Assembly: GCA_024137785.1 (NCBI GenBank)
Contig: JAHRHZ010000266.1
Location: 198,738 to 262,737 of the forward strand
Origin: Ginglymostoma cirratum
Lineage: Eukaryota
Direction of reading: 5' to 3'
DNA: 64,000 nucleotides
In this document: positions 3,966 through 62,297 of the stretch, piece after piece
Numbering within the stretch: the first letter of the stretch is position 1
How the letters are laid out: each line of letters begins with the position of its first letter
Notes under the pieces: generated by a model
What the model was told of the DNA's origin: nothing
Database searches by the model: none
Seen by the model: only the letters and a program-made list of their open reading frames with translations
Translations under genes and position numbers: made by a program

Positions 3966-5192
3966 TTAGGGAGGTGGAAATGAGCTGGGCTGGTTTTGGG
4001 ATGCGGTTGGGGTAGGGGAGATTTTGAAGCTTGTGAAATCCACATTGATACCATTGGGCTGCAGGGTTCCCAGGCTGAATATGATTTGCTGTTCCTGCAC
4101 CCTTCCGGTGGCATCACTGTGGCATTGCAGGAGGCCCAGGATGGACATGTCATCTGAGGAATGGGAGTGGGAGTTGAAATGGTTCGCGACTGGGAGGTGC
4201 AGTTGTTTGTTGCGAACTGAGCGCAGGTGTTCTGCAAAGCGGTCCCCAAGCCTCCGCTTGGTTTCCCCGATGTAGAGGAAGCCACAACGGATACAGCGGA
4301 TGCAGTATACCACATTGGCAGATGTGCAGGTGAACATCTGCCTGATGTGGAAAGTCTTCTTGGGGCCTGGAATTGGGGTGAGGGAGGAGGTGTGGGGGCA
4401 GGTGTAGCACTTCCTGAGGTTACAAGGAAAAGTGCCGGGTGTGGTGGGGCTGGAGGGGAGTGTGGAGCGGACAAGGGAGTCACGGAGGGAGTGGTCCCTC
4501 CGGAAGGCAGATAAGGGTGGGGAGGGAAAAATGTCTTTGGTGGTGGGGTCTGATTGCAGATGGCGGAAGTGTCGGAGGATGATGCGTTGGATCCGGAGGT
4601 TGGTGGGGTGGTATGTGAGGACGAGGGGGATTCTTTTTTGGTTATTATTGCGGGGACGGGGCGTGAGGGATGTGTTCCGGGAAATGCGGGAGACACGGTC
4701 GAGGGCGTTCTCGACCACTGTAGGGGGGAAGTTGCGGTCCTTGAAGAATGAGGACATTTGAGATGTACGGGAGTGGAATGTCTCATCCTGGGAGCAGATG
4801 CGGCGGAGGCGAAGGAGTTGGGAATAGGGGATGGCATTTTTGCAGGAGGGTGGGTGGGAGGAGGTGTATTCCAGGTAGCTGTGGGAGTCAGTGGGCTTGA
4901 AATGGACATTGGTTTCTAGGTGGTTGCCCGAGATGGAGACAGAGAGGTCCAGGAAGGAGAGAGAAGTGTTGGAGATGGTCCAGGTGAACTTCAGGTTGGG
5001 GTGGAAGGTGTTGGTGAAGTGGATGAACTGTTCGAGCTCCTCGTGGGAGCACGAGGCGGCGCCAATGCAGTCATCAATGTAACGGAGGAAGAGGTGGGGT
5101 TTAGGGCCAGTGTAGGTACGGAAGAGGGATTGTTCCACGTAACCTACAAAGAGGCAGGCATGGCTTGGGCCCATGCGGGTACCCATGGCCAC
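3966..5192 (-). CDS. Penelope-like RT (C-terminal half) plus GIY-YIG endonuclease, 408 aa open frame
   Basis: AMGTRMGP, RYIDD, FLDL, HP...K.AIPYSQ, Cys-rich linker, NVVYCIRC..CGFLYIGET, NHFN, L.P.GIN motifs. Confidence 0.92.
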   Translation of the reverse strand: MAMGTRMGPSHACLFVGYVEQSLFRTYTGPKPHLFLRYIDDCIGAASCSHEELEQFIHFTNTFHPNLKFTWTISNTSLSFLDLSVSISGNHLETNVHFKPTDSHSYLEYTSSHPPSCKNAIPYSQLLRLRRICSQDETFHSRTSQMSSFFKDRNFPPTVVENALDRVSRISRNTSLTPRPRNNNQKRIPLVLTYHPTNLRIQRIILRHFRHLQSDPTTKDIFPSPPLSAFRRDHSLRDSLVRSTLPSSPTTPGTFPCNLRKCYTCPHTSSLTPIPGPKKTFHIRQMFTCTSANVVYCIRCIRCGFLYIGETKRRLGDRFAEHLRSVRNKQLHLPVANHFNSHSHSSDDMSILGLLQCHSDATGRVQEQQIIFSLGTLQPNGINVDFTSFKISPTPTASQNQPSSFPPP

Positions 5193-5820: not shown

Positions 5821-6470
5821 GATGATGTCCACATCCTGTGAAAGGTACTCGTGGTATCAGTTAAAATTGGAGCTAGACATTTAAGGCGTGAAATTAAACA
5901 ACACATATAGGGTGGCAGAGGGTTGGAGCTATTTTTCCATCAATGGCAACTGAGACTATATCAATGGATTAAAACTGAGATTAATGCAGCTTTGTTAAAA
6001 AATGGTGTTAAGGGATTTGGGTGAAGGGCAGTTTATGTAGTTAGGTAGATCTGTGATGATTTCATTGAATGACAGAACTGCCAAGAAGGGCTGAATGGCC
6101 CTTTTTGTTCTCATGTCCCCATATTATCATCAGACAAGGGAATTACCAGGTCTATCTTCTCCTCACCCAGGACTCTCATTGGCGGGGACCTTGAAGCTCG
6201 GATCCATAGTGATGTTTTCTCTGTTCCCTATACCAGAACACTGAGTTTGAGCACAGCCAATGAGTGACTGTGTGAGGTTTCAGAGACGGTGACTGAATGG
6301 TCGATAAATCCCAGCCTCATCTCTCTCTCTCTCTCCTTCTCACTGCCTCCTGCCTCAGACCAATTGAAAGAGCCCAGGACAAGCATCTGAGCCGAGATCT
6401 CCCAGACCAGGTGAAGCCTGCTCCCATTGAGCGATGAGGACAGTGACACCATCCGGACATTGCACCTTAC

Positions 6471-6854
6471 CTTCCACTTCCAGTTTTGTTCCTTTCCCAG
6501 TTCCAAAACTGTTAATGTTGAGCTCTACACGACACCGATAGGAACCCTTGTCCTCCAGGCCCAGTCCATCCATTATTATTGAAGCATCTTTGTTGCTGAG
6601 GTTCCCCACGAATCTGAATCGATTTCCACCGTCCCGCAGTATCACATTCTCACACAGCTCACCCTGGGAATGGCCTGGGCCAGGATATGTACACTTAAAG
6701 ATAACACCTGTGAAATATTTAATCCATATCATGGAGCCGGTGAGTGTGAGATTAGTGTCTGGGTGGGTGAAGCTGCAGGGTAAAACAGCGGAGCCTCCTT
6801 CCTCAGTCCTCACACTGTCCGCGATTGTCATTGACCACCCATTTCCAGAATCCG
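6471..6854 (-). CDS. Gene B: Ig V-set (VJ-type) domain exon, Siglec-15-like / NKp30-like receptor
   Basis: Acceptor (ct)n...cccctcacag, donor GAAG|gtaagg, 384 nt, phase 1-1, open; DSGNGWSMTIADSVRTEEGGSAVLPCSFTHP...IW...IFKC...ELC...DASII...D.GSYRCRVELNINSFGTGKGTKLEVE. Confidence 0.9.
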
Positions 6855-7179
6855 CTGTGAGGGGAGAGAAGCAAACAGAGAGAGAGAGAGAGAGAGGATA
6901 TGAACACAGCATGGGAACAGAGGACAATGATTTCAAAAAAAATAAACTGCAAAACAATGGCTGAAACCTTTTGAGGAGCACGATGCACTTTGGCATTGCT
7001 GCTGTCTGGCTGGGACTTCCGACCCCAGCCTTTTCACCCTACAGAGTGCATCTTATATTGAAGCCTTTCTCCAGATCGCTGGACTAACCACACCATCTGT
7101 TTATAGCTCTGGCCAGGAGCTCAACTTACATTCACCAACACAGCTAAAAAACATTGAGACATTTCAATGGCTTCTGAGC

Positions 7180-9140
7180 GTGTTTACCAATGAATGCACA
7201 GGTGAATGTATAGTTGGTGAAATGGGTAGGATTAGCGTTAAGTGGGCAAGGGGGTAATTTAGGTGGTGTAAGTAGGTTGAGCAGTACTCGGTAGGGAGGC
7301 AGGTGGTACCATTACCCAACAGCAACGAGGGTGAGATTGTAACTTTGAAATTTGAGGGGATCAACAAGGTTGGAGAAACAAGGGAGCAAACACAGGGATG
7401 GAAAATATATTCATGAGTGAAATGCAACAATCTCATGGTGAGAAGGGGGGCTGGAGTTGCATGGTGAGCTCCAGTCAGGTCAGGTAGTCAGATGGTGTCA
7501 GCAGTCTACACATAGTGAGCAAGGTTTAATAAATGATGTCAGAATAAAAGATCCCCGAGAGAAGAGTAACCAGAACATCAAAGAAGTTAGCATTCAGTTT
7601 GAGAGTCAGAAACTCTGCTAAATTCAAATAAAGGTAATTAGATGGGATTGAGGGTGGAGTTGGTTGGAGTGGATGCAGAAAGGAATTTAGCAGAAAATAT
7701 GGTTGAAGAATAATAGCAGATGTTTAAAAATGTTCGTGATTCACAGCAAAGATCTATCCAGTGAGAAAGAAGGATTCTAGAAAGCAGAATAAGCCAACTA
7801 TTGTTAGCCAGGGAAGTTAGTAACAGTAACAAATTGAAAGGAAAAACACACAGTGTGGCAAAAATTATTTGTAAATCAGAGGATTAGTAAAGTGTTAAAA
7901 GTTAAAAGAAATCCAAAAAATATGAAGATAGAGAAAATAAACAATGAGGGCAAAATCACAAGTAACATAAATGCAAACGGTAAAAGCTTCTTTACATATC
8001 TCAAAGAATACATATAAAAAGAATAGAAAGACAAAGAGAACTTCGGTTCCTTAGATGACTATGCTGGGAAAATAGCGCTAGAGAACCAGTAAATGGAACA
8101 AGAGTGGGACATTAATCTTCATAGTAGAGTACATCAATGGTATTCCAAAAATACTAAATGTTCAAGAGGCTAAAGGGCAGGAAGAAATAAACACAATAAC
8201 TATCACTAGAGAAAGATGTATTTGGGAAACTAATGCATCTCAAGACCTGTAACTCCTGGACCTTTTTATTTTATTCATTCACAGGATGACGGCATTGCTG
8301 ACTAGGCCAGCACCTATTGCTCATCCCTAATTGCCCAAGGGCAAGGGCAGTTAAGAGGCAACCACATTGCTGTGGGTCTGGAGTCACAGGTAGGCCAGAC
8401 CAGGTAAGGATTATAGTTTTCCTCCTTAAACAAGATTGGTGAACCAGGTGGGGTTTTTCTTCTGAAAATTAACAATGAATTGCTGGTCATCATTCGACTT
8501 TTAATTCCAGATTTGTTCATCGAATTCAAATTCCATTATCTGCCATGGGCACCCAGAACATTCCCTGAGTCTTTGGATTAACAGTCCAGTGATAATATCA
8601 CTAGGCCGGTGCCACCTGATGGATTGCATCCCAATATTTTAAATAAAGTAACTGCAGAGATAGGTATTCATAGTTATCTTCCAAGAAGCCTAAGATTTGC
8701 AAAATGTCCCAAAGGATTTGGCTACTGCCAAAGGAAAACATTTAATCAAAAAGCAAGGGAGACAAACAATGAGGTTACGATAGAACATCTGTATTGGGGA
8801 ATATGTTGGAATAATATAAAGCATGTAATAGCGTCATATCATCAAGCAGAGTCAATATGGCTTCAAGAAGGGAAATTATACCTGATACATTTATTACAGT
8901 TTTTGAGGAAGTAACAAACAGTATAGATAATGGGGAAGCAGTAGCTGTAATATATTTGGATTTCTAAAGGACATTCATTACCAAGGTACTAGATAAGCCT
9001 GCTGAATAACATAAGAGCGCATAATGTTGGGTTTAGTATATTAGCATGGATAGAGGATTGGCTAACTAATAGAAGAAAGAGAATTGGATAAAGGCAGTGT
9101 TTTTAGAATGGTACTTTTTGAGAATGAACTACAAATAGTG
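7180..9140 (+). mobile_element. Old CR1 ORF2 remnant with an internal tRNA-SINE (about 8262-8608, minus)
   Basis: Degenerate PDGLHP.IL..V, GF.KGK, IYLDF.K, WIEDWLTNR motifs. Confidence 0.65.
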
Positions 9141-9917
9141 GAGTGCCACTGGAAACATATAAATATTGGAACAGAAGTTGGTCATTCAGCCCCTCGAGCC
9201 TGCACCACCACCCAGTGAGATCATGGCTGATCTGTGCCCTAACTTCATATATCTGCTTTTGGCCCATATCCCTGAATACATTTACTCACCAAAAATTTAT
9301 CTCACTCAGATTTAAAATTAACAACTGATCTAGTGCCTGCTTCTATTTGTGGAAAAGAGTTACAAACATCTACTACCCTTTCTGTTTAGAAGTGCTTCCA
9401 AACATGTCTCCTGAATGCTCTGGCTGAAACTTTCAGATATGCCCCCATTTCTAGAATTCCAAACCAGTGGAAATAGTTTATCTTTATCTTCCCTGTCTTT
9501 TCTTTTTACTGTCTTGAAGACTTTGATTAAATCACCTGCTCAATTCTAGAGAAAACAGAAAAAATTGTATAATTTTTCCTCACAACGTAACCCCTGAGCC
9601 CGGGTATCACTCTTATAAACCTACATTGTCGGTGCTGGGATTATAGAATTGTTTGTATGTTTAATGATTTAGTTGGTGAAAGTGAATGTTAAGTTTACAG
9701 ATGACCCAAAAATCGGTTGGAAGGCAAATACTGAGGATGACAGAAGAAGGTAATGATGCTTATTTGAAGAGCTGGTGTACACATGGTAGACTAAATAGCC
9801 TTCTTCTATACTGAATGGCATCTGTGATTCTGTGACATCTGAGGGGCTCCTGACACTTATGGTCATACATCCAGTCTCTGTATAGTCACAGACTTGAAGA
9901 TCTGAGCTAATATTTAA

Positions 9918-10016
9918 AAGCTTTTCAGAAGAAGGGTCCAGACCCGAAACGCCAGCTTTCCTGCTCCTCTGATGCAGCTTGGCCTGCTGTGTTCATCCAG
10001 CTCTACACCTTGTTAT
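9918..10016 (+). mobile_element. Mini Penelope pLTR insertion
   Basis: gaagggtccagacccgaaacgccagc...ttgttatc between ctaatatttaa repeats at 9907-9917 and 10017-10027. Confidence 0.8.
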
Positions 10017-10535
10017 CTAATATTTAAGAGGTTGTGTTTTATTTGTGCCACAACATTAGGGGTGCACTTCTTGTGGATATTCAGAGGTATGTCAGCTACA
10101 GAAAGGTAGCAAGGCCTTTTAACATAGCTGGTGTCTTATAACTCATTTACCATTTGCAAATAGATGAGCAGCCACAATGAAATTTCAAGATGCAATCTGA
10201 AACACAATATGTTTACCTGTTCCCCTGAATCTTCTGTCTGTTTGTCTTTTTATTAAAATTCTCATGAGAGATACAGCAGAACTTTGCTTTCTTAATTGTG
10301 CAGCTACAGATGGTATCAGACTAATTGAGGTGCATCAGAATGAAACAGTTATTCCATTGTGCATTATTTACTGTTTTCTACAGGTGAATATATTCTTCAA
10401 TTGCTGAACTCTGCCAGGAAGTCTCTTTTTCACTCTTGTACCACAACATTGGCTTTTATTCACCACAATTGTTCAGCATTTTGGAAAAATAAAATTTTTT
10501 TTAAAAGTCATTACCCAATGTGGGACCTAAGGTAA

Positions 10536-11197
10536 AGAGATAAAAGGTACTGCAGATGCTGGAGAATCTGAGATAACAAGCATGGGGCTGGATGAACACA
10601 GCAGGTCAAGCAGCATCATAGGAGCAGGAAAACTTGACGTTTCGGGCCTAAACCCTTCATCAGAAATGGGGGAGGGGAAGAGGGTTCTGAAATAAATAGG
10701 GAGAGAGGGGGAGGNNNNNNNNNNNNNNNNNNNNNNNNNNNNNNNNNNNNNNNNNNNNNNNNNNNNNNNNNNNNNNNNNNNNNNNNNNNNNNNNNNNNNN
10801 NNNNNNNNNNNNNNNNNNNNNNNNNNNNNNNNNNNNNNNNNNNNNNNNNNNNNNNNNNNNNNNNNNNNNNNNNNNNNNNNNNNNNNNNNNNNNNNNNNNN
10901 NNNNNNNNNNNNNNNNNNNNNNNNNNNNNNNNNNNNNNNNNNNNNNNNNNNNNNNNNNNNNNNNNNNNNNNNNNNNNNNNNNNNNNNNNNNNNNNNNNNN
11001 NNNNNNNNNNNNNNNNNNNNNNNNNNNNNNNNNNNNNNNNNNNNNNNNNNNNNNNNNNNNNNNNNNNNNNNNNNNNNNNNNNNNNNNNNNNNNNNNNNNN
11101 NNNNNNNNNNNNNNTGATGCTGCTTGACCTGCTGTGTTCATCCAGCCCCATGCTTGTTATCTCAGATTCTCCAGCAGCTGCAGTACCTTTTATCTCT
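10536..11197. mobile_element. Inverted pair of Penelope pLTR ends flanking a 400-N gap (10715-11114)
   Basis: Left part near-identical to 3583-3760; right part is its reverse complement. Confidence 0.8.
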
Positions 11198-11619
11198 TAT
11201 CCATGCTTTATCTCACTTCTATATTTGTGCTTTCTCCCCAAATCACTTGGTATCTTTAAAACACCAAAAAATATATTTCTTTCTTAATTATGTTCAGTGA
11301 CTTGGCCTACACATTCTCCTGCGGTAGAGAATTCCACAGATTCACTATCTTTCGAGTGAAGAAATGCTTCTTCAGCTCAGTCCTAATTGGTCTACGCCAT
11401 ATCCTGAGACTGTGTCCCCTTGTTTAAAATTATTTTGGCGGGGATCGGAGAATCAGGAATTCGAGAGAAACAAGGTACATAGAATATTTGAGAGACCAGA
11501 TTGCACAAGACTATGAAGTAAATGGGATCAGAGAAAGAGTGTAAATAATAAATTCAAAGACAAGGTTACTGTCTCTGTAATTGAGGGCATGGAGAGTGGT
11601 AAACCAGATTGGCGAGTAA

Positions 11620-11899
11620 CCATAGAATCCCTACAGTGTGGAAACAGGCCCTTTGGCCCAACAAGTCCACACCGAACCTCAGAGCATCCCACCCAGACCC
11701 ACCCCTCCCTGAACACTACAGGCAATTTAGCATGGCCAATCCACCTAACCTGCACATCTTTGGACTGTGGGAGGAAACCCACGCAGACACAGGGAGAATG
11801 TGCAAACTCCACACAGACAGATGCCTGAGGCTGGAATTGAACCTGAGTCCCTGGTGCTGTGAGGCAGCAGTGCTAACCACTGAGCCACCATGCTGCCCC
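11620..11899 (-). mobile_element. HE1-type SINE inserted in an old CR1 (CR1 remnant about 11530-13165, +)
   Basis: Same head and V-domain as 2832-3131; flank translates FRKDR...GGVAVLIKE (CR1 endonuclease). Confidence 0.85.
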
Positions 11900-13209
11900 A
11901 ATGCAGATTTCAATTGGAAATATGATGTCGTGGTGATAACGAAACCTAGTTCAAAGATGGGGCAGGACAAAGAACTAAACAATCTTAAATAGAATATGTT
12001 CAGGAAAGATAGAGTTAGTGAAGGTACGAAAACAGGAGGTGTGGCAGTATTGATCAAGGAAAACGTTGCAGCGCTGGAGAGAGATGATGTCTCAGGGGGG
12101 CCAAGGGATAGAATCTATTTAGCTCGGGCCAATGAACAAAATGGTGCAATTACATTGTTCAGCGAAATTTATCAGCAACAAACTCATGGGAAATTTGCAG
12201 AGGGACACATGCAAGAGTGTAAGGATTCTAGAATGGTGGGGGAACTAATTATTCAAATATAAACTGGGATGTATACAGGAGAGAAAAGGGCAGGAATTCC
12301 TTCAGTGCATTCAGGAGAATTTTCTATGTTGGTTATGTGTTTAATTCAATAAGAAAGTAGGTGTTGCTGGACTGGTTCTTGAGATTGAGCTAGATCGACT
12401 GGATCAGGAAACAGTAGGAAACATTTAGAAGATAGTAATCATTATTTAGTAAGGTTTAGGTTAACTATGGAAAGGTCCAAGGAGTAAGTAATTCTGATTA
12501 AGAGTGACCAAATGGGGGAGGCCAAATCAATGCGGTGAAAATGAATCTGGCCCACACACAGTGGACTTAAGAATTGGTGAACCAAACTGTGACTAAACAA
12601 TAGGATAGCTTCAAAGAGGAGCTTAAGTACCAGTCAAGGTATTTTCTCTTTAGGGGAAAAGGTACGGCAAATAAATCCAGAGCTCTTTGGATAAGGAAGG
12701 GGGCAAAGAGTAAAATGAAGCAGAAAAAAAAGTGTTGGGAATGTGCTCATTACAAGCTGCAAGTGTCTAATACAACCAGGTTCAAGATAGAAGTCTGAGA
12801 GGAATTTTCACAGATGGAAAATAATTGAGGGGTCTAGACAGAGTAGATAGTAGGAAATGTTCCGATTGTTGAAAGGATCAAGAGCCAGAGAATGCTGATT
12901 TAAGGTGGCTGCCAAAAGAAATGAGAAAGAAAAAAATGATACAATGAGGAGCTAGCATTTTGAATGCGCTGTTTGACAGTATGCTGCAAGCCAATATAAT
13001 CACAGCTTTCAACAAGAAATTGAATCATCACCTGAATGGGAAAGATTTACAGTGTGTGGGGATAAAGAAGGAAAGTGGGACTAATGGAATTGCTCATGTA
13101 TATAGCCAGCGCAAAATGATGGGCTGAATGGCCTCTATCTGCACTGTAACCACACTATGGTACTGTCATGTACTGTGTCCATACAATAATGACAACAGAT
13201 ACTCAGAGC

Positions 13210-13837
13210 AAAGAACAAAGAAAATTACAGGACAGGAACAGGCCCTTCGGCCCTCCAAGCCTGCACCGACATTTTAGTCACAACTAAAACCCCCTACCCT
13301 TCCGGGGACCGAATCCCTCTATTCCCATCCTATTCATGTATTTGTCAAGATGCCCTTTAAAAGTCACTATAGTATCTGCTTCCACTACCTCACCCGGCAG
13401 CAAATTCCAGGCACCCACCAAATTCTGTGTAAAAAACTTACCTCATACATTACCTTTAATCCTTGCCCCTTGCAACTTAAACATATGCCCCCTAGTAACT
13501 GACTCTTCCACCCTGGGAAAAAGCTTCTGGCTATCCACTCTGTCCATGCCCTTTAGAAGCTTATAGACCCCTATCAGGTCACCCCTCAACCTCCATGGTT
13601 TCAGTGAGAACAACCCAAGTTTCTCCAAACTGTCCTCATAGCTAATGCCCTCCATACCAGGCAACACCCTGTTAAATCTTTTCTGTACCTTCTACAAAGC
13701 CACTGAATCCTTCTGGTAGTTTTGCAACCAGAATTGAACACAATATTCCAAATGTGGCCTAACTAAGGTTCTATAAAGCTGCGACATTACCTGTCAATTT
13801 TTAAACTCAATGCCCCAGCCGATGAAGGCAAGCAAAC
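13210..13837 (-). mobile_element. CR1 LINE 3' fragment
   Basis: MLPGMEGISYEDSLEKLGLFSL...RLRGDLI. Confidence 0.85.
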
Positions 13838-13849
13838 ATTCAGAGACTG

Positions 13850-14460
13850 CTTCAGTAACTGAGGAGTTGCTAATGTGAATTTCGTCACCGGTCATGGACA
13901 GGACAGTGTGGCTAGAAATGAGGCAGGTAGAGCAATCCAGAAGACAGCACTTCACGAATCTCAGCTCTTCTCCTTGCCCAACAGTTTCAAGATTTTGCTC
14001 CCGGTATAAACGAGAGCAGGGACTTTGGGAAGGATGAGCAAACTGACGAAAGTACAGGGAACTATTCATGTGGAGGGGATAAAGAAGAAATGTAGTCGTA
14101 TTCAGGGATAGTATAGTTAGGGGAATACGCAATGTTCTCTGTAGTCAGGATCAAAAGTCTTGAAGGCTGTGCTGCCTACCTACTTCCAGAGTTAAGGATA
14201 TCTCATCTGGACTACACAGAAAAACACAGAAAGCTGGAATGGGAGGGGGAAGTACAGCTGTCATGGTCCATGGAGATACTAATGATACAGCTGGAATGAG
14301 ATTGGTGCAGGAGAATTGGGTCTGAATTCACGGGATATTGTCTCCAGTACTGGGGAACCAGAGAGATTTTCCGTTGGGATGAGTTGCAAATGTATCATGC
14401 CTGAACCAGAGTCCTGGCAAATCTCATCACTAGGGCTGTAGAATGGGCTTTAAAGCAAAT
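13850..14460 (+). mobile_element. CR1 ORF1 (SGNH esterase-like) remnant
   Basis: Degenerate RNVVVFRDSIVRGI, LCCLP..RVKDI, VMVHGDTND motifs; similar remnants near 31800-32480 and 41000-41540. Confidence 0.55.
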
Positions 14461-16099
14461 CTGTCTGTGCAGGGTGGGTGGATGTGAAGAGTTCAGGTGC
14501 ATGGAAAATTGTGTTTTACCAATCTCGGAATATCCAAAATTGGCAGTTAAAAACTGATTGCAGTACTGATCTGTATGTGCTAGTAGAGGAACCTGTAAAC
14601 TGAGATCCATATGGATTAACCTGGGTTCAAACACCAGTGGGCTCTCAGGAGCACAATTGAAGAATCACTCACTAGTCACCCCTGCATTGCAGGTGAGAGG
14701 AATGTATTATTCTGAGTGCAGGAAGCAGCTAGCAAGCAAGCCTGTCAAAAGGGAAAAAAAAAACACCTTTCTCTTTGAGTGTTGTTAGCTAACTACTGTC
14801 AAAGGGAAACAGAAGATAAAAGATTTCAACCATGTGTAAAAGACTAGATGTCCAAAATCAATGAATATACTTTCAATATTTCACCATCTACTTTTCATTA
14901 AGACCCACACAGACTTGAATCATTTATTTTACTTTCGGAATCACTTCTAATTCCTAAACTATTTTTAACTATGTTGTGTTATTAATTCTTTGTTGTGTTT
15001 AATACTTAGAAAATTCACTCTTTTTTCAATCAAGAAAGCTTTGTTTAACTGACCTCTTTGAAAGTATAAAATAATTTGATCTGGAGGGAGAAGGTATCCA
15101 AAAGAGAGGGATTTTTTTCTATTAACCTTATTGCAACCGATTGAGGGGGTAGTGACTAACAAATGAACACCAGTTCATTCCTCCACACCCGCAACAGTAA
15201 GGATTTGGGGTATCTGTCCAGAACTGGAATAACTAGGGGTAAAAGACTTGAGGCTCAGATCACGAATCCACAGATTAATTCAAAGAATTAGAGTGGGTAA
15301 ATTGCCATGTTAAAAATGCTTTCTTGAGTTTGCATTACCACGGTATAGATTTGTATGCATTCAATGCCAGAACATTCCTTGCTGAATTAGGAAATGTTAC
15401 GCATGAGGAATCAAATGTTGCACCTCAAACAGTTAAAAGATGTAGAGAGGTATTTGGGATTCAAAATTTGCCAGAAAGCCAGGAAACTCAAAACTTTAAA
15501 AGGGGTGGCCAACGCTTTACAGGAATTCAGGATGATAAAATAGTTAGAGGAATTAAAACTGGAGCAGTGGAAACTAGAATTTCAAGAAAAAGGAAAAGAA
15601 TTTTGGAAATGGGAGAGAGGAAAGGGAAAAGGAGGAAAGGGCAAAGAGAAAAGAGAGTGAATTTGAGGCACAACGGAGATTGAACAAACCAGCTTGAGCT
15701 GCTGTGTGCCATGAAGATGGGTTTGAATGGGAGACTCTTTAGAATGTTGTTCTGGGCTTGAAGGGCTGAATGGCCTGCTTTCACACTGTAGGGATTCTAT
15801 AATGAAGTAATCATCTCTCTCAAATGGTCGAATTCACTATCCCTGAATGTGGTGGATGCTCGGACATTGAGTAAGTTTAAGGACGAGATAGCCACATGTT
15901 TAATTAGTATGTGCTGGAGGGTTATGGAGCGCTGGCAGCAAAGTGGAATTGAGGCTGATATGAGATTAGTCATGATTGTATCAAATGGTGAAGCAGGCTT
16001 AATGGGCTGAATTCTCTACTCCTTCTCCAGGTCCTTACGTTCTTTGCATTCGGTGACAAAGGTGTTTATTTCTAAAAACAGCCTGAGAGACAAAGATAG

Positions 16100-16294
16100 C
16101 AAGGTGTGGAGCTGGATGAATACAGAAGGCCAAGCAGCATCATAGGAGCAGGAAAGCTTGCGATAGGGTTAGGGTTAGGGCTAACCCTAACCCTATCGCA
16201 TTCCTGCTCCTATGATGCTGCTTGGCCTGTTGTGTTCATCCAGCTCCACATCTTCTTACCTCAAATTCTCCAGCATCTGCAGTTCCTACTATCT
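16100..16294. mobile_element. Penelope pLTR fold-back insertion with a telomeric-repeat hairpin core
   Basis: Inverted pLTR arms; core 16159-16200 tgcgatagggttagggttag-gg-ctaaccctaaccctatcgca; 17-bp TSD with 2 mismatches at 16083-16099 and 16295-16311. Confidence 0.85.
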
Positions 16295-17756
16295 CTGAGA
16301 GAAATAGATAGTTTTGGAGTCTAATGGAAATTTGTTTGCATCGGGAGAATTTTACATGTGAATAAAGTAAACAGTTGTGTGCTGGATTTCAGTTTAGAAG
16401 GTCAGAGACTGATTTTTCTCTTTTGACCAGGTGAAACATCCATAGATTGGAAGAATATTTAAGATTTCAGTTTGGCAATTTTGCAGAACGATTTAATGAA
16501 GCTGGATGTATAAACACTCACTCCTGAGAAAGGAAGGAAATTAAAACTGTTAAGAAATAGGCTACCTTAGATCAAGGAGTTTAGTTTAAAGATTCCAGAC
16601 CAGATGTATTTGGTTGAAACCCGAAACGGGTTACAAAAAAGCCTAGAAAGTCTAAGTTGGGTTGTATAAAGGATCAAGGAAGAGGCAATCAGATTCACAT
16701 AACTAGGAATTAAAAATACAGCGAAGTCAAACACAATGTGTGACAGAAAAGAGAATTCTCTGCAGTGTTTGAGTACTGAATGGGGTGATTTTGAGATTAA
16801 TTGGGTTGTTTTTTATCATGGGATTTGGAATCTTCAAAAATGTTCTATATGTAGACAGTTTCATTTATTCTATTTTGTATTCATTTTACGTGATAAACAC
16901 CTTGTTTTATTTTATGAAACCAAATCTGTGCTTATGTTTCAATGAGAAGCCACCTCAATGCAGCCAAGAAAAAACAAAATATGATCTGCCAAGGCATATT
17001 TTAGTCTGGGATCTGATTTGTAACTTAAAAGCATCAGCTGAGATATAACACTTGGTAGCAGACCAACAAGGTGACACATTTTTAACAACACTAGCTCACA
17101 CTGAAGCTGAGGCAGAAACAGTCCCTGAATATCACTACATTATAAATGAGGTGTTGATGAGAAAAGGAGACCAGCTGCCCCTAACGGACCTTCAAACAAG
17201 GACTGGACAGTAATCCAACAGGCGGTCATGCTTACAAGGTGGACTATGGGAAATATTTCAGCTCGTATACGAGAGTCTGATGGCTGGGCATATCGGTATA
17301 TGCAAAGCCCTAGCCCACATTAACCAGCATTTGTACTGGCCACAGCTCCACAAGGATGTCGTGAGGTTTTTGCACCCGTGTGGGATCCGTGGAATGTTGC
17401 ACCTGTAGAGTGTCAGGGAAACTTCAAACAAGAAGAGAAACATAGCAAGACGACTTAATGAAGAAGGCGACTATTTTCCTTCTCTTAGCAGAAAGCCACC
17501 TCTTGAGTATTGCAGTACCAAGAACACACATAAAAGTAGGTCAATAATCAATTGTAACTTTGATCAGTTTGTAATAGTGAAGGAAGATCTGGGGCTCATG
17601 TGTACTAGCCTGGATTCAGGCTACTGTCATGTAAAGATCACAATCAAAGGACCATCCACTAATCACTCCTGCATTTCAGGTGAAAGGGATCTATCACACT
17701 CTGTGCTGAAATTCATCTAACCGAAAAGTGGGTCCAAAGGAATAAGAAGAAAAGTT

Positions 17757-18195
17757 TGATTTATAGGGAGATGCTGAAGAGGCTAGGGCTTGTTTCCCTG
17801 GAGCATCAGACACTGAGGGGTGACCTTATAGAGTTTCATAAAATCATTAGGGACTTGGGTACAGTGAATATCCAAGGTCTTTTTTCTCGATTGGGAGTGT
17901 CCAAAAATAGAGGATATAGGTTTACAGTGAGAGGGGAAAGATTTATAAAGTACCTGATGGGCAACTTTTCTATGCAGAGGGTGATGCATGTATGGAACAA
18001 GCTGCCAGAGAAAGTGGTGGAGACTGGTATGATTGCAACAATTAAAAGGAATCTGGATGGGTACAGGAAGGGTTTAGAAGGATAGGGGCCAAATGTTGGC
18101 AAATGAGACACTGTCAGATAGGGATGTCTGGTCGGCACAGACAAACTGAACCAAAGGGTTTGTTTCTTGCTGTATGACTCTCTGAATCTATGACT
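17757..18195 (+). mobile_element. CR1 3' tail fragment
   Basis: LKRLGLVSLE...LRGDLIE...WNKLPEKVV; tail ctgtatgactctctgaatctatgactct. Confidence 0.8.
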
Positions 18196-18364
18196 CTCTC
18201 ACTCTGAGTGCTGTCAGTTAACTCCCATCGACAGGAAACAGGGCAAAAAAGATTTCAACTTACTGAAAAAGCCAAGAATGCTGAAATTAACTGTTCATTT
18301 ACCAGCATTCAATGAATGAACCAGGGAGACTGATCTGTATATCTTTGGACTGTTTGGAGAGCAA

Positions 18365-18805
18365 ATGGTGGCCAAGTGGTATTATTGCTAGAATATTAAT
18401 CTAGAAACTCGCGTTGAAATCTTGTCACAGTAGAATTCGAATTCAATTTAAAAAATCTGGAATTAAAAAAACCTACTGATGAGCATGAAATCTTTGATAA
18501 CAAGGTGTGGGGCTGGATGAACACAGCAGGCCAAGCAGCATCATAGGAGCAGGAAAACTTGACGTTTCGGGCCGAGACCCGAAATCTTTGCTGGGTATCA
18601 GAAAAACCCACCTGGCTCATTAATATCCTTCAGGGAAGGAAATCTGCCATTCTTACCTGGTCTGGCCAACATGTGACTCTGGATTCACAGCAATGTGGAT
18701 GACTTTGAACTGCTCTTTGAAATAGCTCAGTTGAAGGGCAACTGGGTCCAGGCAATAAATGCTGACTGATCAGTGATGACAATGTCCCATGAGTAAATAA
18801 AAACA
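18365..18805 (+). mobile_element. tRNA-derived SINE interrupted by a single-arm Penelope pLTR (18497-18580)
   Basis: SINE body as at 52448-52787; insert flanked by gaaatctttg repeats at 18487-18496 and 18581-18590. Confidence 0.8.
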
Positions 18806-19259
18806 AATCTTGTTTTGGTCTCATTTCTTATTCTTAATCTGTATGTTGTGTTATTAATTCTTTTCACATTTAATAACTACTAAATTCATTCTTTTATTAA
18901 TTTAAGAAAGCCCTTGTTAAATAGCTCCTTTGAAGATACATCTCGATAAGATGCAGTGCAGTAATCTATCAAGGATTCTCCAAAAGCACATTAAAGGAAA
19001 AGCCTCATTTTTGCATCTAGAAGGACGAAAGAAGCAGATATTTGGGAATAGCACCATCTGCAAGTTCTCCTTCGAGACACACACCACCTTGACCTGGAAC
19101 CATGTCATCATTCCTTCACTGTCACTGGGAAAATCCTGAAACTCTCTTCCTAACAACACTGCACCTGTCCCCCTAGGAATACACAGGTTCAAAAGCGGAT
19201 CACTACCACCTACTCCAGGGCAATTAGGGATTCTAATAAATGCTGGTCCAACCAGCGTC

Positions 19260-19495
19260 CCATGGCTAATCCGCCTAGCCTATCCGTCCCTAGACATTAT
19301 GGGGAAATTTAGCATGGCCAGTCCACCGAATCTGCACACCTTTGGACTGTGGGAGGAAGCCAGAGCACCCAGCAGAGACCCACACAGGCACAGGAAGAAT
19401 GTACAAACTCCACACAGACAGTCAACCAAGGGTGGAATCAAACCCCAGTGCCCTGGGGCTGTGAGTTAGCAGCGTTAACCACTAAGCCACTGCCC
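19260..19495 (-). mobile_element. HE1-type SINE (diverged); another copy at about 23036-23332
   Basis: V-domain and tRNA head recognisable. Confidence 0.75.
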
Positions 19496-20019
19496 AATTA
19501 AAATCTGAATGAATGAATCTTTCCAGTTGCGCAAAGACTCAGTCTTTTTATGCTTTTTTAAAATGAAGGTGGAAATGGGGACAAACTGTTTTACAGTTAG
19601 TGTTTTAAAGAATTGCTGCATATTTTGAAAACCAAGTGACCTGACACTTATGGTAAGCATTGTGTAAATAGCTGTCTGAACAAACCGGAATTGAAGTGGT
19701 TGCAGATGAAACGATAGTGAGGGGGTGTACAGATGCAGTTTCTGTTCATAACAAGAAGTTCGTTTGTCTATAGACTACTGGCCAGTTGCTAATGTCAAAT
19801 GCCTTTTGCCTGTCAACAACTATGTGTTTGAATCTCAGGTAACTGGACAACCTGGGACTGGGAACAGATACAGAGAAAATTGTTTTGAACTCCACCAGCT
19901 CAGGAGCTGTTTTCTCTGTTCTCTGCAGTCAAAACCCACTTTTAACCTGATGAAAACTGATTTATCTTCCCTTCAGAAATGTTTGTAAGCTGTGACTTCT
20001 AACTGATAAGTCAGAGACC

Positions 20020-22143
20020 TTTTATAAGTGAACCTGCCACCTTGGGTCTCTTACAAAGCAGTGAAAACATCTGAAGAAAGACAACAGAAGACGACTATAC
20101 AATGTTGGTCCAAGGTTGTGGAACACTGTCTCTGGGACTGCTTGGAATTGATGGACTGGACCGTCTTCAAGTACTCAGCAACAAACCCCCAAGATGAGTA
20201 TGACACCACAGACTTTGTTAGCAAATGTGTGGACGATTGCATACCAATTAGGTCAATCTGAGTGCTCCCTAACCATAAACTTTGGATGAACGAGGAAATC
20301 CACTTATTACGGAAGACCAAACGATCAGTATTCAAGTCGGATGACCCAGATCAATACAGGAAAGCCAAATATGACCTCCACAAAGCCATCAGGGATGCCA
20401 AGAGGCAGTACCGAACCAAGCTGGAGGCCCGAACCAAGCAGATTCCCGCCACCTGTGGCAAGGCCGAAATAACGTCACAGGATACAAAATGAAGCAGAGC
20501 AAGATAACGGACAAAGACACATCCCTCCCTGACACACTCAATGCTTTCTATGATCAGTTTGAGCAGAATGCCAGCAGCGTGGTGATGCTTGACCCGATAG
20601 CCCCAGGCACATCTGTTCCGTCCATCATTGCTGCTGATGTCAGATCAGTTTTCCTTCGAGTCAGCCCAAGGAGAGCGACGGGCCCGGATGAGCACTCAGA
20701 TCCCATACAGACCAACTGGAGGAGGTATTCACCGACACCTTCAACCTCTCCCACCTACAAGCCAAAATCCCCACCTGCTTCAAGGAGACCACTGCCATCC
20801 CCGTACCCAAGAAAACACATGCAGTGTGCCTTAATGACTACTGCCCAGTAGTTTTGTCCTCAATTATCAAGAGGTGCTTCGAGAGGTTGCTCATGGCCCA
20901 CATCAACTCCAGTCTGCCTCGATCCCTAGAGTTTGCCTAACGATGGAACTGGTCAAAAGCGGATGACATATTACTAGGCCTGCAGTCATTCCTGGAACAT
21001 TTGGACAATAAAGACACCTACATCAGACTCCCGCCAATTGGCTACAGCTCCACCTTCAACACCATTAGACCCTCCAGGCTGATTTCAAAATTCCATGACC
21101 TTGGTCTTGGCTCAGCCCTCTGCAAGTGGAGCCTCAGCTTTCTGACCCGCAGACCACAGTCAGTGAAATTTTCCTCCACAATAACACTCAAACTGGAGCA
21201 CCACAAGGATGCGCCCACAGTCCCTACCGTACTCCTCGTACATCCATCACTGTGTTGCTGAATTCTAAACAAACGCCGTCTACAAGTTCACAGATGACAC
21301 CACCGTAGTGGGACGGATATTTAACAGCGATGAGTCAAAACACAGAAAGGAGATAGAAGCTTGGTGATGTGGTGCAATGAAAACAACCTCTCTCGCAACC
21401 TTGGAAAAACTAAAGAACTGATCATTGACTTTAGAAAGAAAGGAGGAGAACATATCCCCATCTACATCAATGAAACTGAGGTTGAGAGGGTGGAGAGCGA
21501 CAAGTTGCTCAGAGTGACGATAACTGAGAACCTCGACTGGACTGCCCACATAGATGCAACAGTCAAGAAGGCACAACAATGCATCTTCTTCCTCAGGCGG
21601 CTCAGAAAATTTTGCATGTCCATAAGGACCCTCACTAACTTCTACAGAGACACCGTTGAAAGCATACTGTCTGAATGCATAATGGCCTAGTACGACATCT
21701 GCTTTGCCCAGGACCATAAGAAACTACGGAAGGTGATGTGTGCAGCCCAGACCATTATGGAAGCCAACCTTCCATCCATGGACTCCATGTACAGAGCTCG
21801 CTGCCACAGAAAGGGGGCCAACATCATTAATTGACCTATTGCACCCTGGTCATGTCCTCCTACAACCTCTTCCAACAGGCTGAGGTTATGAAGCCTGAAC
21901 ACACGCACAAGGAACAGCTTCTTCCTAGCTGTTAGCAGACTGATGAATGGATTCTCTAGCCTCAAGTAATATTGATCTTGCTGACAGTGATCTTGCCTGA
22001 TGCACGCCCAGTGCAATGTAACCTGTATATCTCTGTCGAAATCTTTTTGATCTGTCCATGTTGCTGACTATGATCTGCCCGTACAGCTCATAAACAAAGC
22101 TCTTCCTTGTGCTTTGGTATGCGTGACAATCAATCAATCAATC
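20020..22143 (+). mobile_element. Rex1/Babar-like LINE, frameshifted
   Basis: DCLE.MDWTVF, ALNDYCPV, YSSTFNTI.P..LISK, KFTDDTTVVG, WCNENNL..N..KTKELIIDFRK; (caat)n 3' tail. Confidence 0.85.
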
Positions 22144-23903
22144 ATAAGACAGCTCCTTCTTTATCAATTTTGTCCCCTGGTTCAAGATTCCCCAAAGATG
22201 GTGGGATTTTCCAATGAGGAAAGGTTGATTTGACTAGGCCTGTATTCATCACAGGTTCGAAGAATGAGGGGGGATCTCTTTGAAACATTAACGAGCTGGA
22301 CATATGAGATACCGGGAAGATAGTTCCCCTGTTTGGGGAATCACAGTCTCAGGATATGGGGTTGGCCATTTCGGATTGAGAAGAGGAAACAATTTTTCAT
22401 TCAGAGGGTGGTCAACCTGCGAGATTCGCTACCAGAGAAGTCTAAGGAGGCTGAGTATGTTCAATCAAGGAAATTGATACAGTTTTAGTTCTTCAAGCTG
22501 TCCAGGTATTTGGAGAGAAAGTGGGGATATTGCGTTGAGATAGAGGATCAATCATAAACATACTGAATGGCGGAGAAGGCCAAATAGCCTACTCCTGCTT
22601 CTATTTTCTACAGATTTATATCCAAGGAAACATCTTACCTACACCTTCCTGTCTACCCTTTTAAGTAATTTATAAGTTTCAGTGGGAGTACTCTGTGCAG
22701 GTCTGATCACCGCACAATAGGACGGATGTGATTGCAGTGGAAGCAGTGCACAGATTTACCAGAATGTTGCCTGGGATGGAGCAGTTTAGCTATAAAGAGA
22801 GGCTGGATAAACTCAGGTTGTTTTCTTTAGAGCAGAGTAGGCTGTTGGGGGCACCTGATAGATTACGACGGGCATGGACAATGTGGATAGAATGCAACTG
22901 TTCTTCTTAGTTGAAGGTTCAAATACAAGGGAGCATAATTTTAAGGTGAAAAGCAGGAGGTTCAGAGGGGAATGTAAGGAAAACATTTTCACCCAGAGGC
23001 TGGTAGTAATCTGGAATGCGTTATCTGGGAAGATACCATAGAATGCCTACAATGCAGAAGCAGGCCATTCAACCCATACCAACCCTCCAAAGAGCACCCC
23101 ATCCAAAACTAAACCCACCTGCCTACCTACCCTATCCTTGCATTCCCATGGCTAATCCACCTAATCTACACAACTTTGGACTGTGGGAGGAAACTCGAGA
23201 ACCCAGAGGAAACTGATGCAAACACAGAGAGAATGTGCAAACTCAATACAGACATTTACCAAAGGGTGGAATCAAACCCAGGTCCGTGGCACTGTGAAGC
23301 AGCGCTGCTAACCACTGGGCCACATGCCACCCCATTGTTGAGGCTGAAAATGTTTAAAAATCACTAGCACGAGCATTTGAAATCCCATAACATTCAAAGC
23401 TATGGGCCCAAGTGCTAGGAAGTGGGACTTGTGTAGATTTGGAGTGGTTTTTGTTGGTGCAGACTTGATGGGCCAACTTTGAACTGTGTGATTCTATGGT
23501 TCTTTGAGATCAGGTCTCATTCTTTGAAACTGTACAGAATACAGACCCAGTTTGACCAGTCTATCTTCATAGGCCTGCCAACCCGTGAATAAATCTGCGA
23601 AACCTGTGTTGCAATCCCACTTTGGAAAAATATCCTTTCTGAGATAACAAAATTAAAACTGGGCACAGCATTTGAAGAACAGGATTATTGAGTTTCTATA
23701 CTGCAGAAGCACAACTTCATTACTCCTGTGCTTAAATCATTTTGCAACAAAAGCTAACACTCCGTTAATCTTTTTTCATAGCTTCCTGCATCTGCATGTT
23801 AGCCTTCAGTGATTTGTATTTGTTTCACAAGCAAACTGCTTCTGCTCAATTTTGAAACAGCAGTAAAGGACAATGCACATACTGCTAAACAGCCCCAGGG
23901 TAT

Positions 23904-23916
23904 GGAAACTGAAACT
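23904..23916. promoter_or_regulatory. ISRE/IRF motif in intron 1 of gene B
   Basis: ggaaactgaaact (reverse AGTTTCAGTTTCC) about 90 bp downstream of the leader exon donor. Confidence 0.5.
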
Positions 23917-24002
23917 AAATCAGCAGACAAAATCATCAAGAAGGAGGCAATTGCATGATTAATAAAAATGAATTTGAACAGTAAATATTACAAAGTACTT
24001 AC

Positions 24003-24060
24003 TGTGACCCTGTACTGAGACTGACACGAATGCAGAGAGCCAAACATAGAGAGAATTCAT
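24003..24060 (-). CDS. Gene B: predicted signal-peptide (leader) exon MNSLYVWLSAFVSVSVQGH
   Basis: gcaATG start, hydrophobic core ending VQG, donor A|gtaagt in phase 1, in frame with the V exon (ACG GAT TCT...); lies in one of the few non-repeat islands. Confidence 0.72.
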
Positions 24061-62213: not shown

Positions 62214-62297
62214 TTGTAAAATGGAAAGAACAATGTTGGTTTCTAATGTCTCAACCCCAGATGTGTTTATCGTTCAGTCATTCTCCAGATTGTCCAA

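What the first reader, a model, noticed from the sequence alone, without database searches (positions are those of the whole stretch)
6471..24060. Gene B: shark receptor with a Siglec-15/NKp30 mosaic VJ-type Ig domain
Seen: leader MNSLYVWLSAFVSVSVQGH can splice in phase 1 across a 17-kb repeat-filled intron to an intact V exon. From recalled family motifs: WSM...LPCSFTHP, the extra cysteine pair (IFKC...ELC) and the F-strand arginine in YRCRVE match the Siglec-15 V domain, where that arginine binds sialic acid. The G strand GTGKGTKLEVE is J-like and resembles NKp30 (CRVE...GTGNGTRLVVE). V and J-like parts are in one exon, with no recombination signals seen. Inference: a member of a poorly characterised cartilaginous-fish family bridging sialic-acid lectins and antigen-receptor-like NK receptors.
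Basis: partly seen in the sequence, partly recalled or inferred. Interest (0 to 1): 0.78.

Follow-up and report, generated by a model that had tools for sequence, protein, structure and literature searches.

The report
Shark Siglec-15-like receptor gene start
These are the first two exons of a shark gene from a large, little-studied family of Siglec-15-like immune receptors, and it is not a hybrid between a Siglec and the NK receptor NKp30.

Summary
On the minus strand, a 58-base leader exon (24060-24003) and an intact 384-base V exon (6854-6471) have canonical phase-1 splice sites. They lie 17.1 kb apart, and the assembly gap sits inside that intron.

The whole V domain is Siglec-15-type. Its best solved relative is human Siglec-15 (49.5 bits; NKp30 28.9). 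A profile of shark and ray relatives gives Siglec-15 80.5 bits and NKp30 33.5. It keeps the Siglec-15-specific second disulfide, the sialic-acid arginine and the WSM tryptophan.

The "J-like" G strand is not an NKp30 graft. G-T-x-L is already the rule in bony-vertebrate Siglec-15. Only the glycine after the aromatic residue is extra, and that glycine recurs patchily among shark paralogues.

The gene belongs to an elasmobranch expansion: 44 predicted proteins in one word search, carrying inconsistent automatic names. Members are V-V receptors with either ITIM tails or a Siglec-15-type transmembrane lysine. I found no paper on the family. The scan had already reported it on DNA 88 kb away.

The leader is the only family-type leader in the window and matches a whale-shark relative at 18 of 20 residues. 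One probable RNA contig is spliced exactly at 6471 into a second Ig exon that lies outside the window. The leader-V junction was not seen in RNA.

The parts
24003..24060 (-). Leader (signal peptide) exon, coding part: ATG at 24060, 19 codons plus the first base of a split codon; donor GT at 24002-24001
   Evidence: Sequence read. A profile of 13 family leaders, scanned over 2,782 six-frame pieces of the window, hits only here (22.1 bits, E 1.5e-5; next best 10.0 bits). Whale-shark P0249's leader is 18 of 20 identical (E 1.4e-6).
6855..24002 (-). Proposed intron 1: 17,148 letters as assembled, holding the assembly gap and retroelement debris
   Evidence: Splice sites. At least 23% of readable letters are repeated elsewhere in the window. 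No further family exon was found in it by tblastn. The junction itself was not seen in RNA.
10715..11114 (.). Assembly gap (400 N) inside the intron
   Evidence: No coding frame crosses it. Continuity not tested, letters not looked up.
6471..6854 (-). V1 exon: Siglec-15-type V-set domain, phase 1 at both ends; acceptor AG at 6856-6855, donor GT at 6470-6469
   Evidence: One X1 contig ends its match exactly at 6471 and runs on for 17 letters that read like the start of the second Ig domain of relatives. One poly-A RNA read ends its match at about 6854 (worked out from bin depths).

Best explanation
Gene B is the 5' part (signal-peptide exon plus first V exon) of a transcribed member of an elasmobranch-specific multigene family that descends from Siglec-15.

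Shown: the V domain is Siglec-15-type over its whole length, G strand included. The leader is of the family's own type. The V exon's 3' splice site is used, and it joins to a further Ig exon that lies beyond the window's start.

Inferred, about 0.6: from its nearest relatives (zebra-shark and whale-shark genes), the full protein is leader-V-V-transmembrane with an ITIM-bearing inhibitory tail.

Inferred, about 0.5: the first V domain binds sialic acid as human Siglec-15 does. That means a salt bridge from the F-strand arginine (R108 here, R143 in man), stacking on the WSM tryptophan (W6, W44 in man) and on the G-strand aromatic residue (F116, Y154 in man), with the C'-C'' region held by the second disulfide (C54-C67, C95-C104 in man).

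The J-like look of the G strand is the ancestral Siglec-15 G-T-x-L-x-V core plus a lineage-variable glycine. It is not a graft from NKp30.
For: Domain identity:
- Pfam V-set.
- PDB phmmer: Siglec-15 7zoz, E 3.6e-12, 49.5 bits, over residues 4-111. Next are TIM-3 at 35.6, an Ig light chain at 30.1 and NKp30 at 28.9.
- Profile of 11 shark and ray rows: Siglec-15 E 1.4e-21, 80.5 bits, aligned through the G strand. Next are pIgR at 42 and NKp30 at 33.5.
- Residue mapping from the and alignments onto the numbering of PMC10264397 (passages): C26=C64, C107=C142, C54=C95, C67=C104, R108=R143, W6=W44, F116=Y154.

Family:
- 203 HMMER hits at E<=1e-3.
- All 29 named proteins I looked up among them are Siglec-15, Siglec-12, uncharacterized or similarly labelled Ig proteins. 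None is labelled NCR3.
- 44 shark and ray proteins in the word search.
- Careful tree of 69 rows: the elasmobranch clade of 58 rows has support 100/99. The window sits in an 8-row clade (99/96) with Stegostoma and Rhincodon genes.
- Of those 7 neighbours, 4 have ITIM-like tails, 1 has the same lysine-free TM, 2 are TM-less isoforms, and none has a TM lysine.

Leader. Relatives' gene models join ...GHT to D-x-x-NGWSM, the same junction residue as the window's split codon ACG.

Transcription:
- X1 contigs lie only on 6434-6783, plus a repeat at 7512-7565, within the 1,601 bases laid.
- One contig is cut exactly at 6471. Its 17 further letters are absent from the window (0 matches at <=2 mismatches). 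They translate in frame to A-A-Q-G-E-V, against A-A-Q-G-Q-V in whale-shark P0249.
Against: - The leader-to-V junction was not observed. The only RNA read at the acceptor is a single read whose clipped letters the tool did not print.
- X1 and X3 are only guessed to be RNA. One X1 contig (6434-6500) crosses the donor unspliced. One X3 contig matches intron letters 7425-7600 exactly, so genomic DNA or pre-mRNA is present in those runs.
- Expression is very low in the one certain poly-A run: 2 reads laid from about a quarter of 8 Gb, one of them on a repeat. The other certain RNA run gave none.
- The second Ig, TM and tail exons are outside the window. Architecture and signalling type are therefore borrowed from relatives.
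- A whale-shark activating-type gene (P0250, TM lysine) shares the window's C-C' stretch WIKYFTGVIFKCTYPGP exactly, so an activating form is not excluded.
- The arginine is replaced in 13 of 50 distinct elasmobranch rows. The G-G' loop is four residues shorter than in man. PMC7226832 (passage) reports that cloned zebrafish Siglec-15 did not bind the tested glycans strongly. Sialic-acid binding is therefore unproven.
Confidence: 0.75

Rival explanations
1. One reading: a mosaic V domain whose body is Siglec-15-like and whose G strand comes from, or bridges to, NKp30-type VJ receptors. This would place the family between sialic-acid lectins and antigen-receptor-like NK receptors.
For: NKp30 chains do match the exon over residues 12-127 (E 8.5e-6, 28.9 bits). 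The last 45 residues match rearranged Ig light-chain V-J best (E 6e-6 to 0.04), so the G strand really is J-like. V and J-like parts share one exon with no RSS.
Against: Siglec-15 aligns through the G strand with the family profile (positions 24-152). NKp30 is 20 bits weaker for the exon and 47 bits weaker for the profile, and is in 0 of the best 60 rows for the F-G part. G121 is present in 10 of 11, and T122 in 6 of 11, non-elasmobranch Siglec-15 rows. Gar Siglec-15 reads Y-G-D-I-N-G-T-K-L-Q-V. Shark paralogues with F-Q or F-E at the same length interleave with F-G forms on the tree. No NKp30 sequence could be placed in a tree: none was available from a tool, and the shark NCR3 paper is not held.
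Confidence: 0.06
2. It is simply the shark one-to-one orthologue of SIGLEC15.
For: [quoted passage not shown] Activating members of the family share the P-L-G-x-K transmembrane motif with bird, frog and teleost Siglec-15.
Against: It is a multigene family, with many paralogues per species among the 44 proteins (for example at least 10 Hemiscyllium entries). A second family gene's TM and tail exons lie in the same window, and earlier notes place further family genes next door. The second domain of relatives is V-set, not the short C2-like domain of bird Siglec-15. The nearest relatives carry ITIM tails and no TM lysine. The elasmobranch clade sits on a long stem apart from bony-vertebrate Siglec-15.
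Confidence: 0.03
3. The leader at 24060 does not serve this V exon. The true upstream exon (another leader, or earlier V exons of a longer multi-V gene) lies in the assembly gap or in a misjoined scaffold, and 24060 is a relic or belongs to another transcript.
For: The junction is unobserved. A 400-N gap of unknown true size lies in the intron. Some family members repeat V1-type domains internally (P0002 with 4 domains, lungfish P0001 with 7), so a V1-type exon need not be the first one.
Against: It is the only family-type leader in 64 kb, on the right strand, upstream, and in phase. It is of the short MNSLY-WLSAF subtype. That subtype occurs with the window's nearest V1 relatives in whale shark (P0249) and zebra shark (P0243, P0244) and with close bamboo-shark paralogues (P0230, P0232). 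The junction residue Thr matches those models.
Confidence: 0.12
4. A decaying or silent gene fragment: an orphan V exon in a birth-and-death cluster.
For: Very few reads in the certain RNA runs. The locus is riddled with retroelements. The rest of the gene is unseen.
Against: The frame is open and all three splice sites are canonical. All conserved family residues are kept. There is exon-limited contig cover and a contig spliced at the donor.
Confidence: 0.06

Closest known systems
Siglec-15 (human structure 7ZOZ; bird, frog, turtle, gar, teleost and lungfish orthologues)
   Same: V-set domain with W-S-M, L-P-C-x-F-T-H-P, the canonical disulfide, the extra C95-C104-type disulfide, the F-strand arginine in C-R-V-E, an aromatic residue on the G strand, and a G-T-x-L core. 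Activating members of the shark family also share its P-L-G-x-K transmembrane motif.
   Different: Multigene tandem family rather than a single conserved gene. The second domain is V-set, not C2-like. The nearest relatives signal through ITIM-like tails and have no TM lysine. The G-G' loop is four residues shorter. The clade is separate and sits on a long stem.
Predicted shark genes in NCBI: Rhincodon LOC109912568 (P0249), Stegostoma LOC125449501 (P0243, P0244), Hemiscyllium 'Siglec-15 isoform X1' XP_060690388 (P0003)
   Same: 80-82% identity over the V exon. Same short leader subtype in P0249, P0243 and P0244, same junction residue, same F-G-T/S-x-K/R-G-T G strand, and the same start of the second domain.
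   Different: No model from the window's own species turned up. Orthology is blurred: the window's C-C' stretch is identical to the activating-type whale-shark gene P0250, while its leader and G strand match P0249.
NKp30 / NCR3
   Same: Non-rearranging V domain with a glycine-rich J-like G strand in a single exon. Weak whole-domain similarity (28.9 bits).
   Different: Much weaker than Siglec-15. No WSM/FTHP signature match was reported, and the profile's best stretch against NKp30 covers only positions 34-68. MHC linkage and B7-H6 binding are recalled features and were not testable here.
CD33-related Siglecs and other paired Ig receptor families (works-like comparison)
   Same: Fast-evolving tandem clusters of V-headed receptors in inhibitory (ITIM) and activating (charged TM) versions, with frequent loss of the sialic-acid arginine: 13 of 50 distinct rows here.
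   Different: Weaker sequence relation (CD33 25.9 bits, Siglec-8 25.7). The domain make-up is V-V rather than V-C2n.

Membership tests
Siglec-15 family (broad sense: V domain homologous to Siglec-15) | V-set domain whose closest solved or named relatives are Siglec-15 | tested here: met
   7zoz is top for both the exon (49.5 bits) and the family profile (80.5 bits). Named HMMER hits are Siglec-15 from birds, frog, turtle, gar, teleosts and lungfish.
Siglec-15 family (broad sense: V domain homologous to Siglec-15) | Essential F-strand arginine (human R143) | tested here: met
   R108 aligns with R143 (alignment; numbering from PMC10264397). It is kept in 37 of 50 distinct elasmobranch rows and 10 of 11 other rows.
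Siglec-15 family (broad sense: V domain homologous to Siglec-15) | Second intradomain disulfide C95-C104, called unique to Siglec-15 | tested here: met
   C54 and C67 align with C95 and C104. They are present in 49 and 48 of 50 distinct elasmobranch rows.
Canonical SIGLEC15 orthologue | V-set followed by one C2-set domain | tested here: inconclusive
   The next exon is outside the window; only its first 17 bases are known from a contig. In the nearest relatives the second domain is V-set, while bird Siglec-15 has a short Ig_3/I-set-type domain.
Canonical SIGLEC15 orthologue | Transmembrane lysine for DAP12/DAP10, no ITIM | not testable with these tools
   The TM exon is not in the window. Of 7 nearest tree neighbours, 0 have a TM lysine and 4 have ITIM-like tails.
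Canonical SIGLEC15 orthologue | Single-copy gene in conserved synteny | tested here: not met
   There are many paralogues per species. A second family gene's TM and tail exons lie at 62214-62095 and 46804-46628 in the same window. Synteny with SIGLEC15 neighbours was not examinable.
NKp30 / NCR3 | V domain closest to NKp30 | tested here: not met
   28.9 bits against 49.5 for the exon, and 33.5 against 80.5 for the profile. NKp30 is in 0 of the best 60 rows for the F-G part.
NKp30 / NCR3 | MHC linkage, charged TM pairing with CD3-zeta/FcR-gamma, B7-H6 binding (features recalled, not from a call) | not testable with these tools
   No linkage data and no TM exon in the window. The shark NCR3 paper is not held.
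VJ-type non-rearranging V domains (descriptive class) | J-like G strand (F-G-x-G...T-x-L-x-V) encoded with V in one exon, no RSS | tested here: inconclusive
   One exon and no RSS. Ig light-chain V-J are the best matches of the last 45 residues. In those alignments, however, the J phenylalanine falls on T118, two residues after F116, so the register differs from a true F-G-x-G-T motif.

The most novel reading that the evidence does not exclude
The elasmobranch Siglec-15-like genes, of which gene B is one, may be the cartilaginous-fish counterpart of the mammalian CD33-related Siglecs. On this reading they are a rapidly diversifying tandem array of paired inhibitory (ITIM) and activating (Siglec-15-type lysine TM) sialic-acid receptors built from V-V ectodomains. 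Inhibitory and activating partners would exchange V-domain segments: the window's V1 shares its C-C' stretch with an activating whale-shark gene, and its leader and G strand with a whale-shark paralogue (P0249) that lies in the ITIM-tailed clade. The sialic-acid arginine is repeatedly lost. It would follow that Siglec-15, a single conserved gene in bony vertebrates, was the seed of a whole paired-receptor system in sharks and rays, and perhaps independently in lungfish.
Probability: 0.35. Interest if true: 0.6.

Novelty: new member of a known kind. Interest (0 to 1): 0.38.

Why it matters
For this gene alone, the result is a correction. What looked like a chimeric link between lectins and NK or antigen-type receptors is a regular Siglec-15-type V domain, and its J-like tail is mostly an ancestral Siglec-15 trait.

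The wider point is the family. Sharks and rays have turned the otherwise single, conserved Siglec-15 into dozens of V-V receptors with inhibitory or activating signalling. Public databases carry these under at least seven unrelated automatic labels. I found no paper on them in four searches.

If they bind sialic acids, they would show that paired, fast-evolving Siglec systems arose more than once in vertebrates. As a whole, the family would rate as a new variant of a known kind. The piece in this window adds one more member, and the scan had already reported the family on neighbouring DNA.

Tried and rejected
- **Downstream exons.** I looked for gene B's second Ig, TM and tail exons in the window with 16 and then 5 family proteins, and with the RNA loose end. 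None was found. The 6.4 kb downstream of the V exon is reverse-transcriptase and GIY-YIG (Penelope-type) debris.
- **Other leaders.** A leader profile gave a single hit.
- **Paralogous V exons in the window.** None.
- **Structure.** No fold evidence is offered.
- **Tree with NKp30.** The comparison therefore rests on PDB scores.
- **The shark NCR3 paper** (PMC8273117) is not held. What I say about it is recalled, or taken from passages of PMC12227049.
- **Window's own species.** The word search with the bare exon sees only proteins of 70-222 residues and gave 6. The second word search, with P0004 region 1-151, gave 44. Neither lists a protein of the window's own genome.
- **Y46 = human Y87.** This equivalence rests only on the pairwise alignment next to a gap. 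The multiple alignment does not support it, so I dropped it.
- **Rows left out of trees.** One search used the window plus 80 of the 171 proteins then held: best domain at least 38 bits and at least 95 query positions, with 16 redundant cluster members skipped. One search used 64 proteins that I had labelled by species out of 253 held, up to two domains each; P0015 dropped out for lack of a full domain.
- **Supplements.** Supplements of the papers were not opened. Supplementary Fig. 3 of PMC10264397 and Supplementary file 9 of PMC8455134 might bear on the structural and gene-family claims.

Full report
**What is there.** Read on the minus strand, the window has an ATG at 24060 followed by 19 codons of a hydrophobic leader and one further base. 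A consensus donor follows (A|GTAAGT; GT at 24002-24001). At 6856-6855, a long pyrimidine tract ends in CAG. The exon then runs from 6854 to 6471 and ends G|GTAAGG. It is 384 bases: two bases that complete the split codon (ACG, Thr), 127 open codons, and one base. Both exon borders are phase 1, as is usual for Ig-domain exons (established knowledge). No RSS heptamer or nonamer lies within 6271-7052. The window has two 400-N gaps. The one at 10715-11114 lies inside the proposed 17,148-letter intron, so no frame crosses it. At least 23% of the intron's readable letters recur elsewhere in the window (whose interval included one exon base). Of the seven long ORFs scanned across the window, four match reverse transcriptase or a GIY-YIG domain and three match no family.

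**What the domain is.** Pfam calls it V-set (E 8e-11). Against all PDB chains the best match is human Siglec-15 (7zoz, E 3.6e-12, 49.5 bits). Next come TIM-3 (35.6), an Ig lambda chain (30.1), NKp30 (28.9), CD33 (25.9) and Siglec-8 (25.7). A profile of 11 shark and ray relatives widens the margin: Siglec-15 80.5 bits (E 1.4e-21), aligned from the WSM motif through the G strand; then pIgR 42, JAML 41 and NKp30 33.5.

I mapped the alignments onto the residue numbers in the Siglec-15 structure paper (PMC10264397, passages read):
- The window's C26 and C107 are the canonical C64-C142 pair.
- C54 and C67 are the C95-C104 bridge, which that paper calls a unique feature of Siglec-15.
- R108 is R143, the arginine that salt-bridges sialic acid.
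- W6 is W44.
- F116 falls on Y154.

**The J-like strand.** The last 45 residues on their own match rearranged Ig light chains best (E 6e-6 to 0.04). NKp30 is in none of the best 60 rows, so the strand is J-like but not specifically NKp30-like. In those alignments the J phenylalanine falls on T118, not on F116, so the register is not that of a true F-G-x-G-T motif.

Across relatives the explanation is simple:
- Non-elasmobranch rows (bird, frog, turtle, gar, teleost and lungfish Siglec-15, plus two deep-branching chimaera and cow-shark relatives) read aromatic-E/Q-x-x-x-G-T-x-L. At the window's positions, G121 is present in 10 of 11 rows, T122 in 6 of 11 and L124 in 7 of 11. Gar even reads Y-G-D-I-N-G-T-K-L-Q-V.
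- Among 50 distinct elasmobranch rows, 26 read F/V/I-Q/E/K and 17 read F/I-G at the same length. The two kinds interleave on the tree, even within a species. Whale-shark P0249 (F-G-T-G-K-G-T) pairs with P0245 (F-E-T-Q-T-P-T) at 100/97.

The J look is therefore an ancestral Siglec-15 core plus one or two glycine substitutions that come and go. No second parent is needed.

**The family.**
- HMMER against 1.84 billion representatives found 203 proteins at E<=1e-3 and 12 at E<=1e-30.
- The names I looked up (30 proteins) are Siglec-15 of birds, frog, turtle, gar, teleosts and lungfish, and 'uncharacterized', 'Siglec-12', 'Siglec-15' or similar for sharks, rays, chimaera and lamprey. One lungfish model has seven such V domains.
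- A word search with a bamboo-shark member returned 44 shark and ray proteins from 96 candidates. They come from Chiloscyllium, Hemiscyllium, Heterodontus, Stegostoma, Rhincodon, Pristiophorus, Carcharodon, Heptranchias, Leucoraja and Narcine. Their labels are Siglec-15, -12, -10, JAML-like, pIgR-like, A33-like or uncharacterized.
- In a careful tree of 69 rows, the elasmobranch rows form one clade (58 rows, 100/99) on a long stem. Its sister is a chimaera and cow-shark pair, and both lie apart from the bony-vertebrate Siglec-15 rows (99/89).
- The window's exon sits in an 8-row clade (99/96) with zebra-shark and whale-shark genes. Its best identity is 82% (P0249), so the window's own species is not among the annotated ones found.

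**Architecture of relatives.**
- The second domain of relatives is V-set, while bird Siglec-15 has a short C2-like domain.
- Members come in two signalling types. One has a lysine-free TM with tails carrying S/V-x-Y-x-x-I/V motifs. The other has short-tailed TMs reading P-L-G-x-K, the same motif as in bird, frog and teleost Siglec-15, whose lysine binds DAP12/DAP10 (PMC7226832, passage).
- Of the window's 7 nearest neighbours, 4 have ITIM-like tails, 1 has the same TM with a truncated tail, 2 are TM-less isoforms, and none has a TM lysine. I therefore guess that gene B is inhibitory (about 0.6).
- The activating whale-shark gene P0250 shares the window's C-C' stretch exactly. This both weakens that guess and hints at segment exchange between paired genes.

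**The leader.**
- A profile of 13 family leaders, run over all 2,782 six-frame pieces of the window, hits only 24060-24004 (22.1 bits, E 1.5e-5). The runner-up has 10.0 bits.
- The window's leader is of a one-residue-shorter subtype (MNSLY-WLSAF). That subtype occurs with the window's nearest V1 relatives in whale shark (P0249) and zebra shark (P0243, P0244) and with close bamboo-shark paralogues (P0230, P0232). P0249's first 20 residues match at 18 of 20 (E 1.4e-6).
- Those models join ...G-H-T to D-x-x-N-G-W-S-M, the same Thr as the window's split codon.

This is good indirect support. It is not proof.

**Reads.** One search found 20 runs holding part of the exon, none on record as RNA. I laid four runs on 6000-7600.
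- X1 (guessed RNA) placed 14 contig pieces. Depth is confined to 6432-6809 plus a repeat at 7512-7565. One contig stops matching exactly at 6471 and continues for 17 letters that are not in the window. In frame these read A-A-Q-G-E-V, almost the start of P0249's second domain. The donor is therefore used, and a second Ig exon follows beyond the window.
- Against a clean RNA reading: one X1 contig (6434-6500) runs unspliced across the donor, and an X3 contig matches intron 7425-7600.
- The certain poly-A run X21 gave 2 reads from about 24% of the run. By bin arithmetic, one covers about 6779-6854 and then runs on unlike, which fits the acceptor. Its letters were not printed, and it is a single read.
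- X22 gave none.

**Earlier notes of the scan.**
- s1-879519 reports a four-V ITIM gene of the same family 88 kb before this window and calls the family unpublished and paired. My searches agree independently.
- s1-879737 and s1-879872 describe the neighbouring gene A. I saw its TM exon (62214-62095) and a tail exon (46804-46628) by tblastn.

**Literature.** Four full-text searches returned nothing that describes this family: Siglec-15 + shark; Siglec + cartilaginous fish + Siglec-15; Siglec + elasmobranch; Siglec + elephant shark + ITIM. I checked passages in PMC13738210, PMC9630641 and PMC8455134. Subscription papers are not searched, and the 2018 Siglec evolution review cited in PMC9630641 was not seen.

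**Verdict.** The Siglec-15 part of the reading is confirmed, and the NKp30 mosaic is not. Gene B is one more member, seen only in part, of an elasmobranch Siglec-15-derived paired-receptor family.

Noticed in passing
window 62095-62214 (-) and 46628-46806 (-): Exons of the upstream neighbour (gene A). One is a lysine-free TM exon 57% identical to the TM of Hemiscyllium P0003. The other is a tail exon matching the D-Q-D-G-S-S-F-Y...G-K-R-F-T-I-S-A-S-E-D region of zebra-shark and whale-shark inhibitory members. The window therefore holds parts of two tandem family genes on the same strand.
   Followed up: partly
   Followed up: no
window 3966-5192 (-), 600-1280 (-), 24868-25893 (+), 28501-30243 (-): Retroelement ORFs. 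One has a GIY-YIG domain (Penelope-type, E 2.5e-5). Three are reverse-transcriptase ORFs (best E 1.3e-27). They fill the space downstream of the V exon and between the two genes.
   Followed up: partly
window 6680-6730 (-) versus protein P0250: The window's C-C' stretch (W-I-K-Y-F-T-G-V-I-F-K-C-T-Y-P-G-P) is identical to an activating-type whale-shark gene (TM lysine). Its leader and G strand match a different whale-shark gene, P0249. This is possible segment exchange between paired receptors.
   Followed up: no
proteins P0001 and P0020 (Protopterus annectens): Lungfish also has multi-V models of Siglec-15 type: one 1,128-residue model with 7 V domains and one 'Siglec-15 isoform X2' with two. 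This may be an independent expansion, or merged tandem genes.
   Followed up: no
proteins P0243, P0249, P0245: Several annotated isoforms skip the TM exon. Skipping either shifts the tail frame (P0243, P0249) or joins the ectodomain directly to the ITIM tail (P0245). Soluble or TM-less splice forms may be a family habit.
   Followed up: no
window 6310-6347 and 6864-6904: (GA)n/(CT)n simple repeats flank the V exon on both sides. The reads tool skipped them.
   Followed up: no
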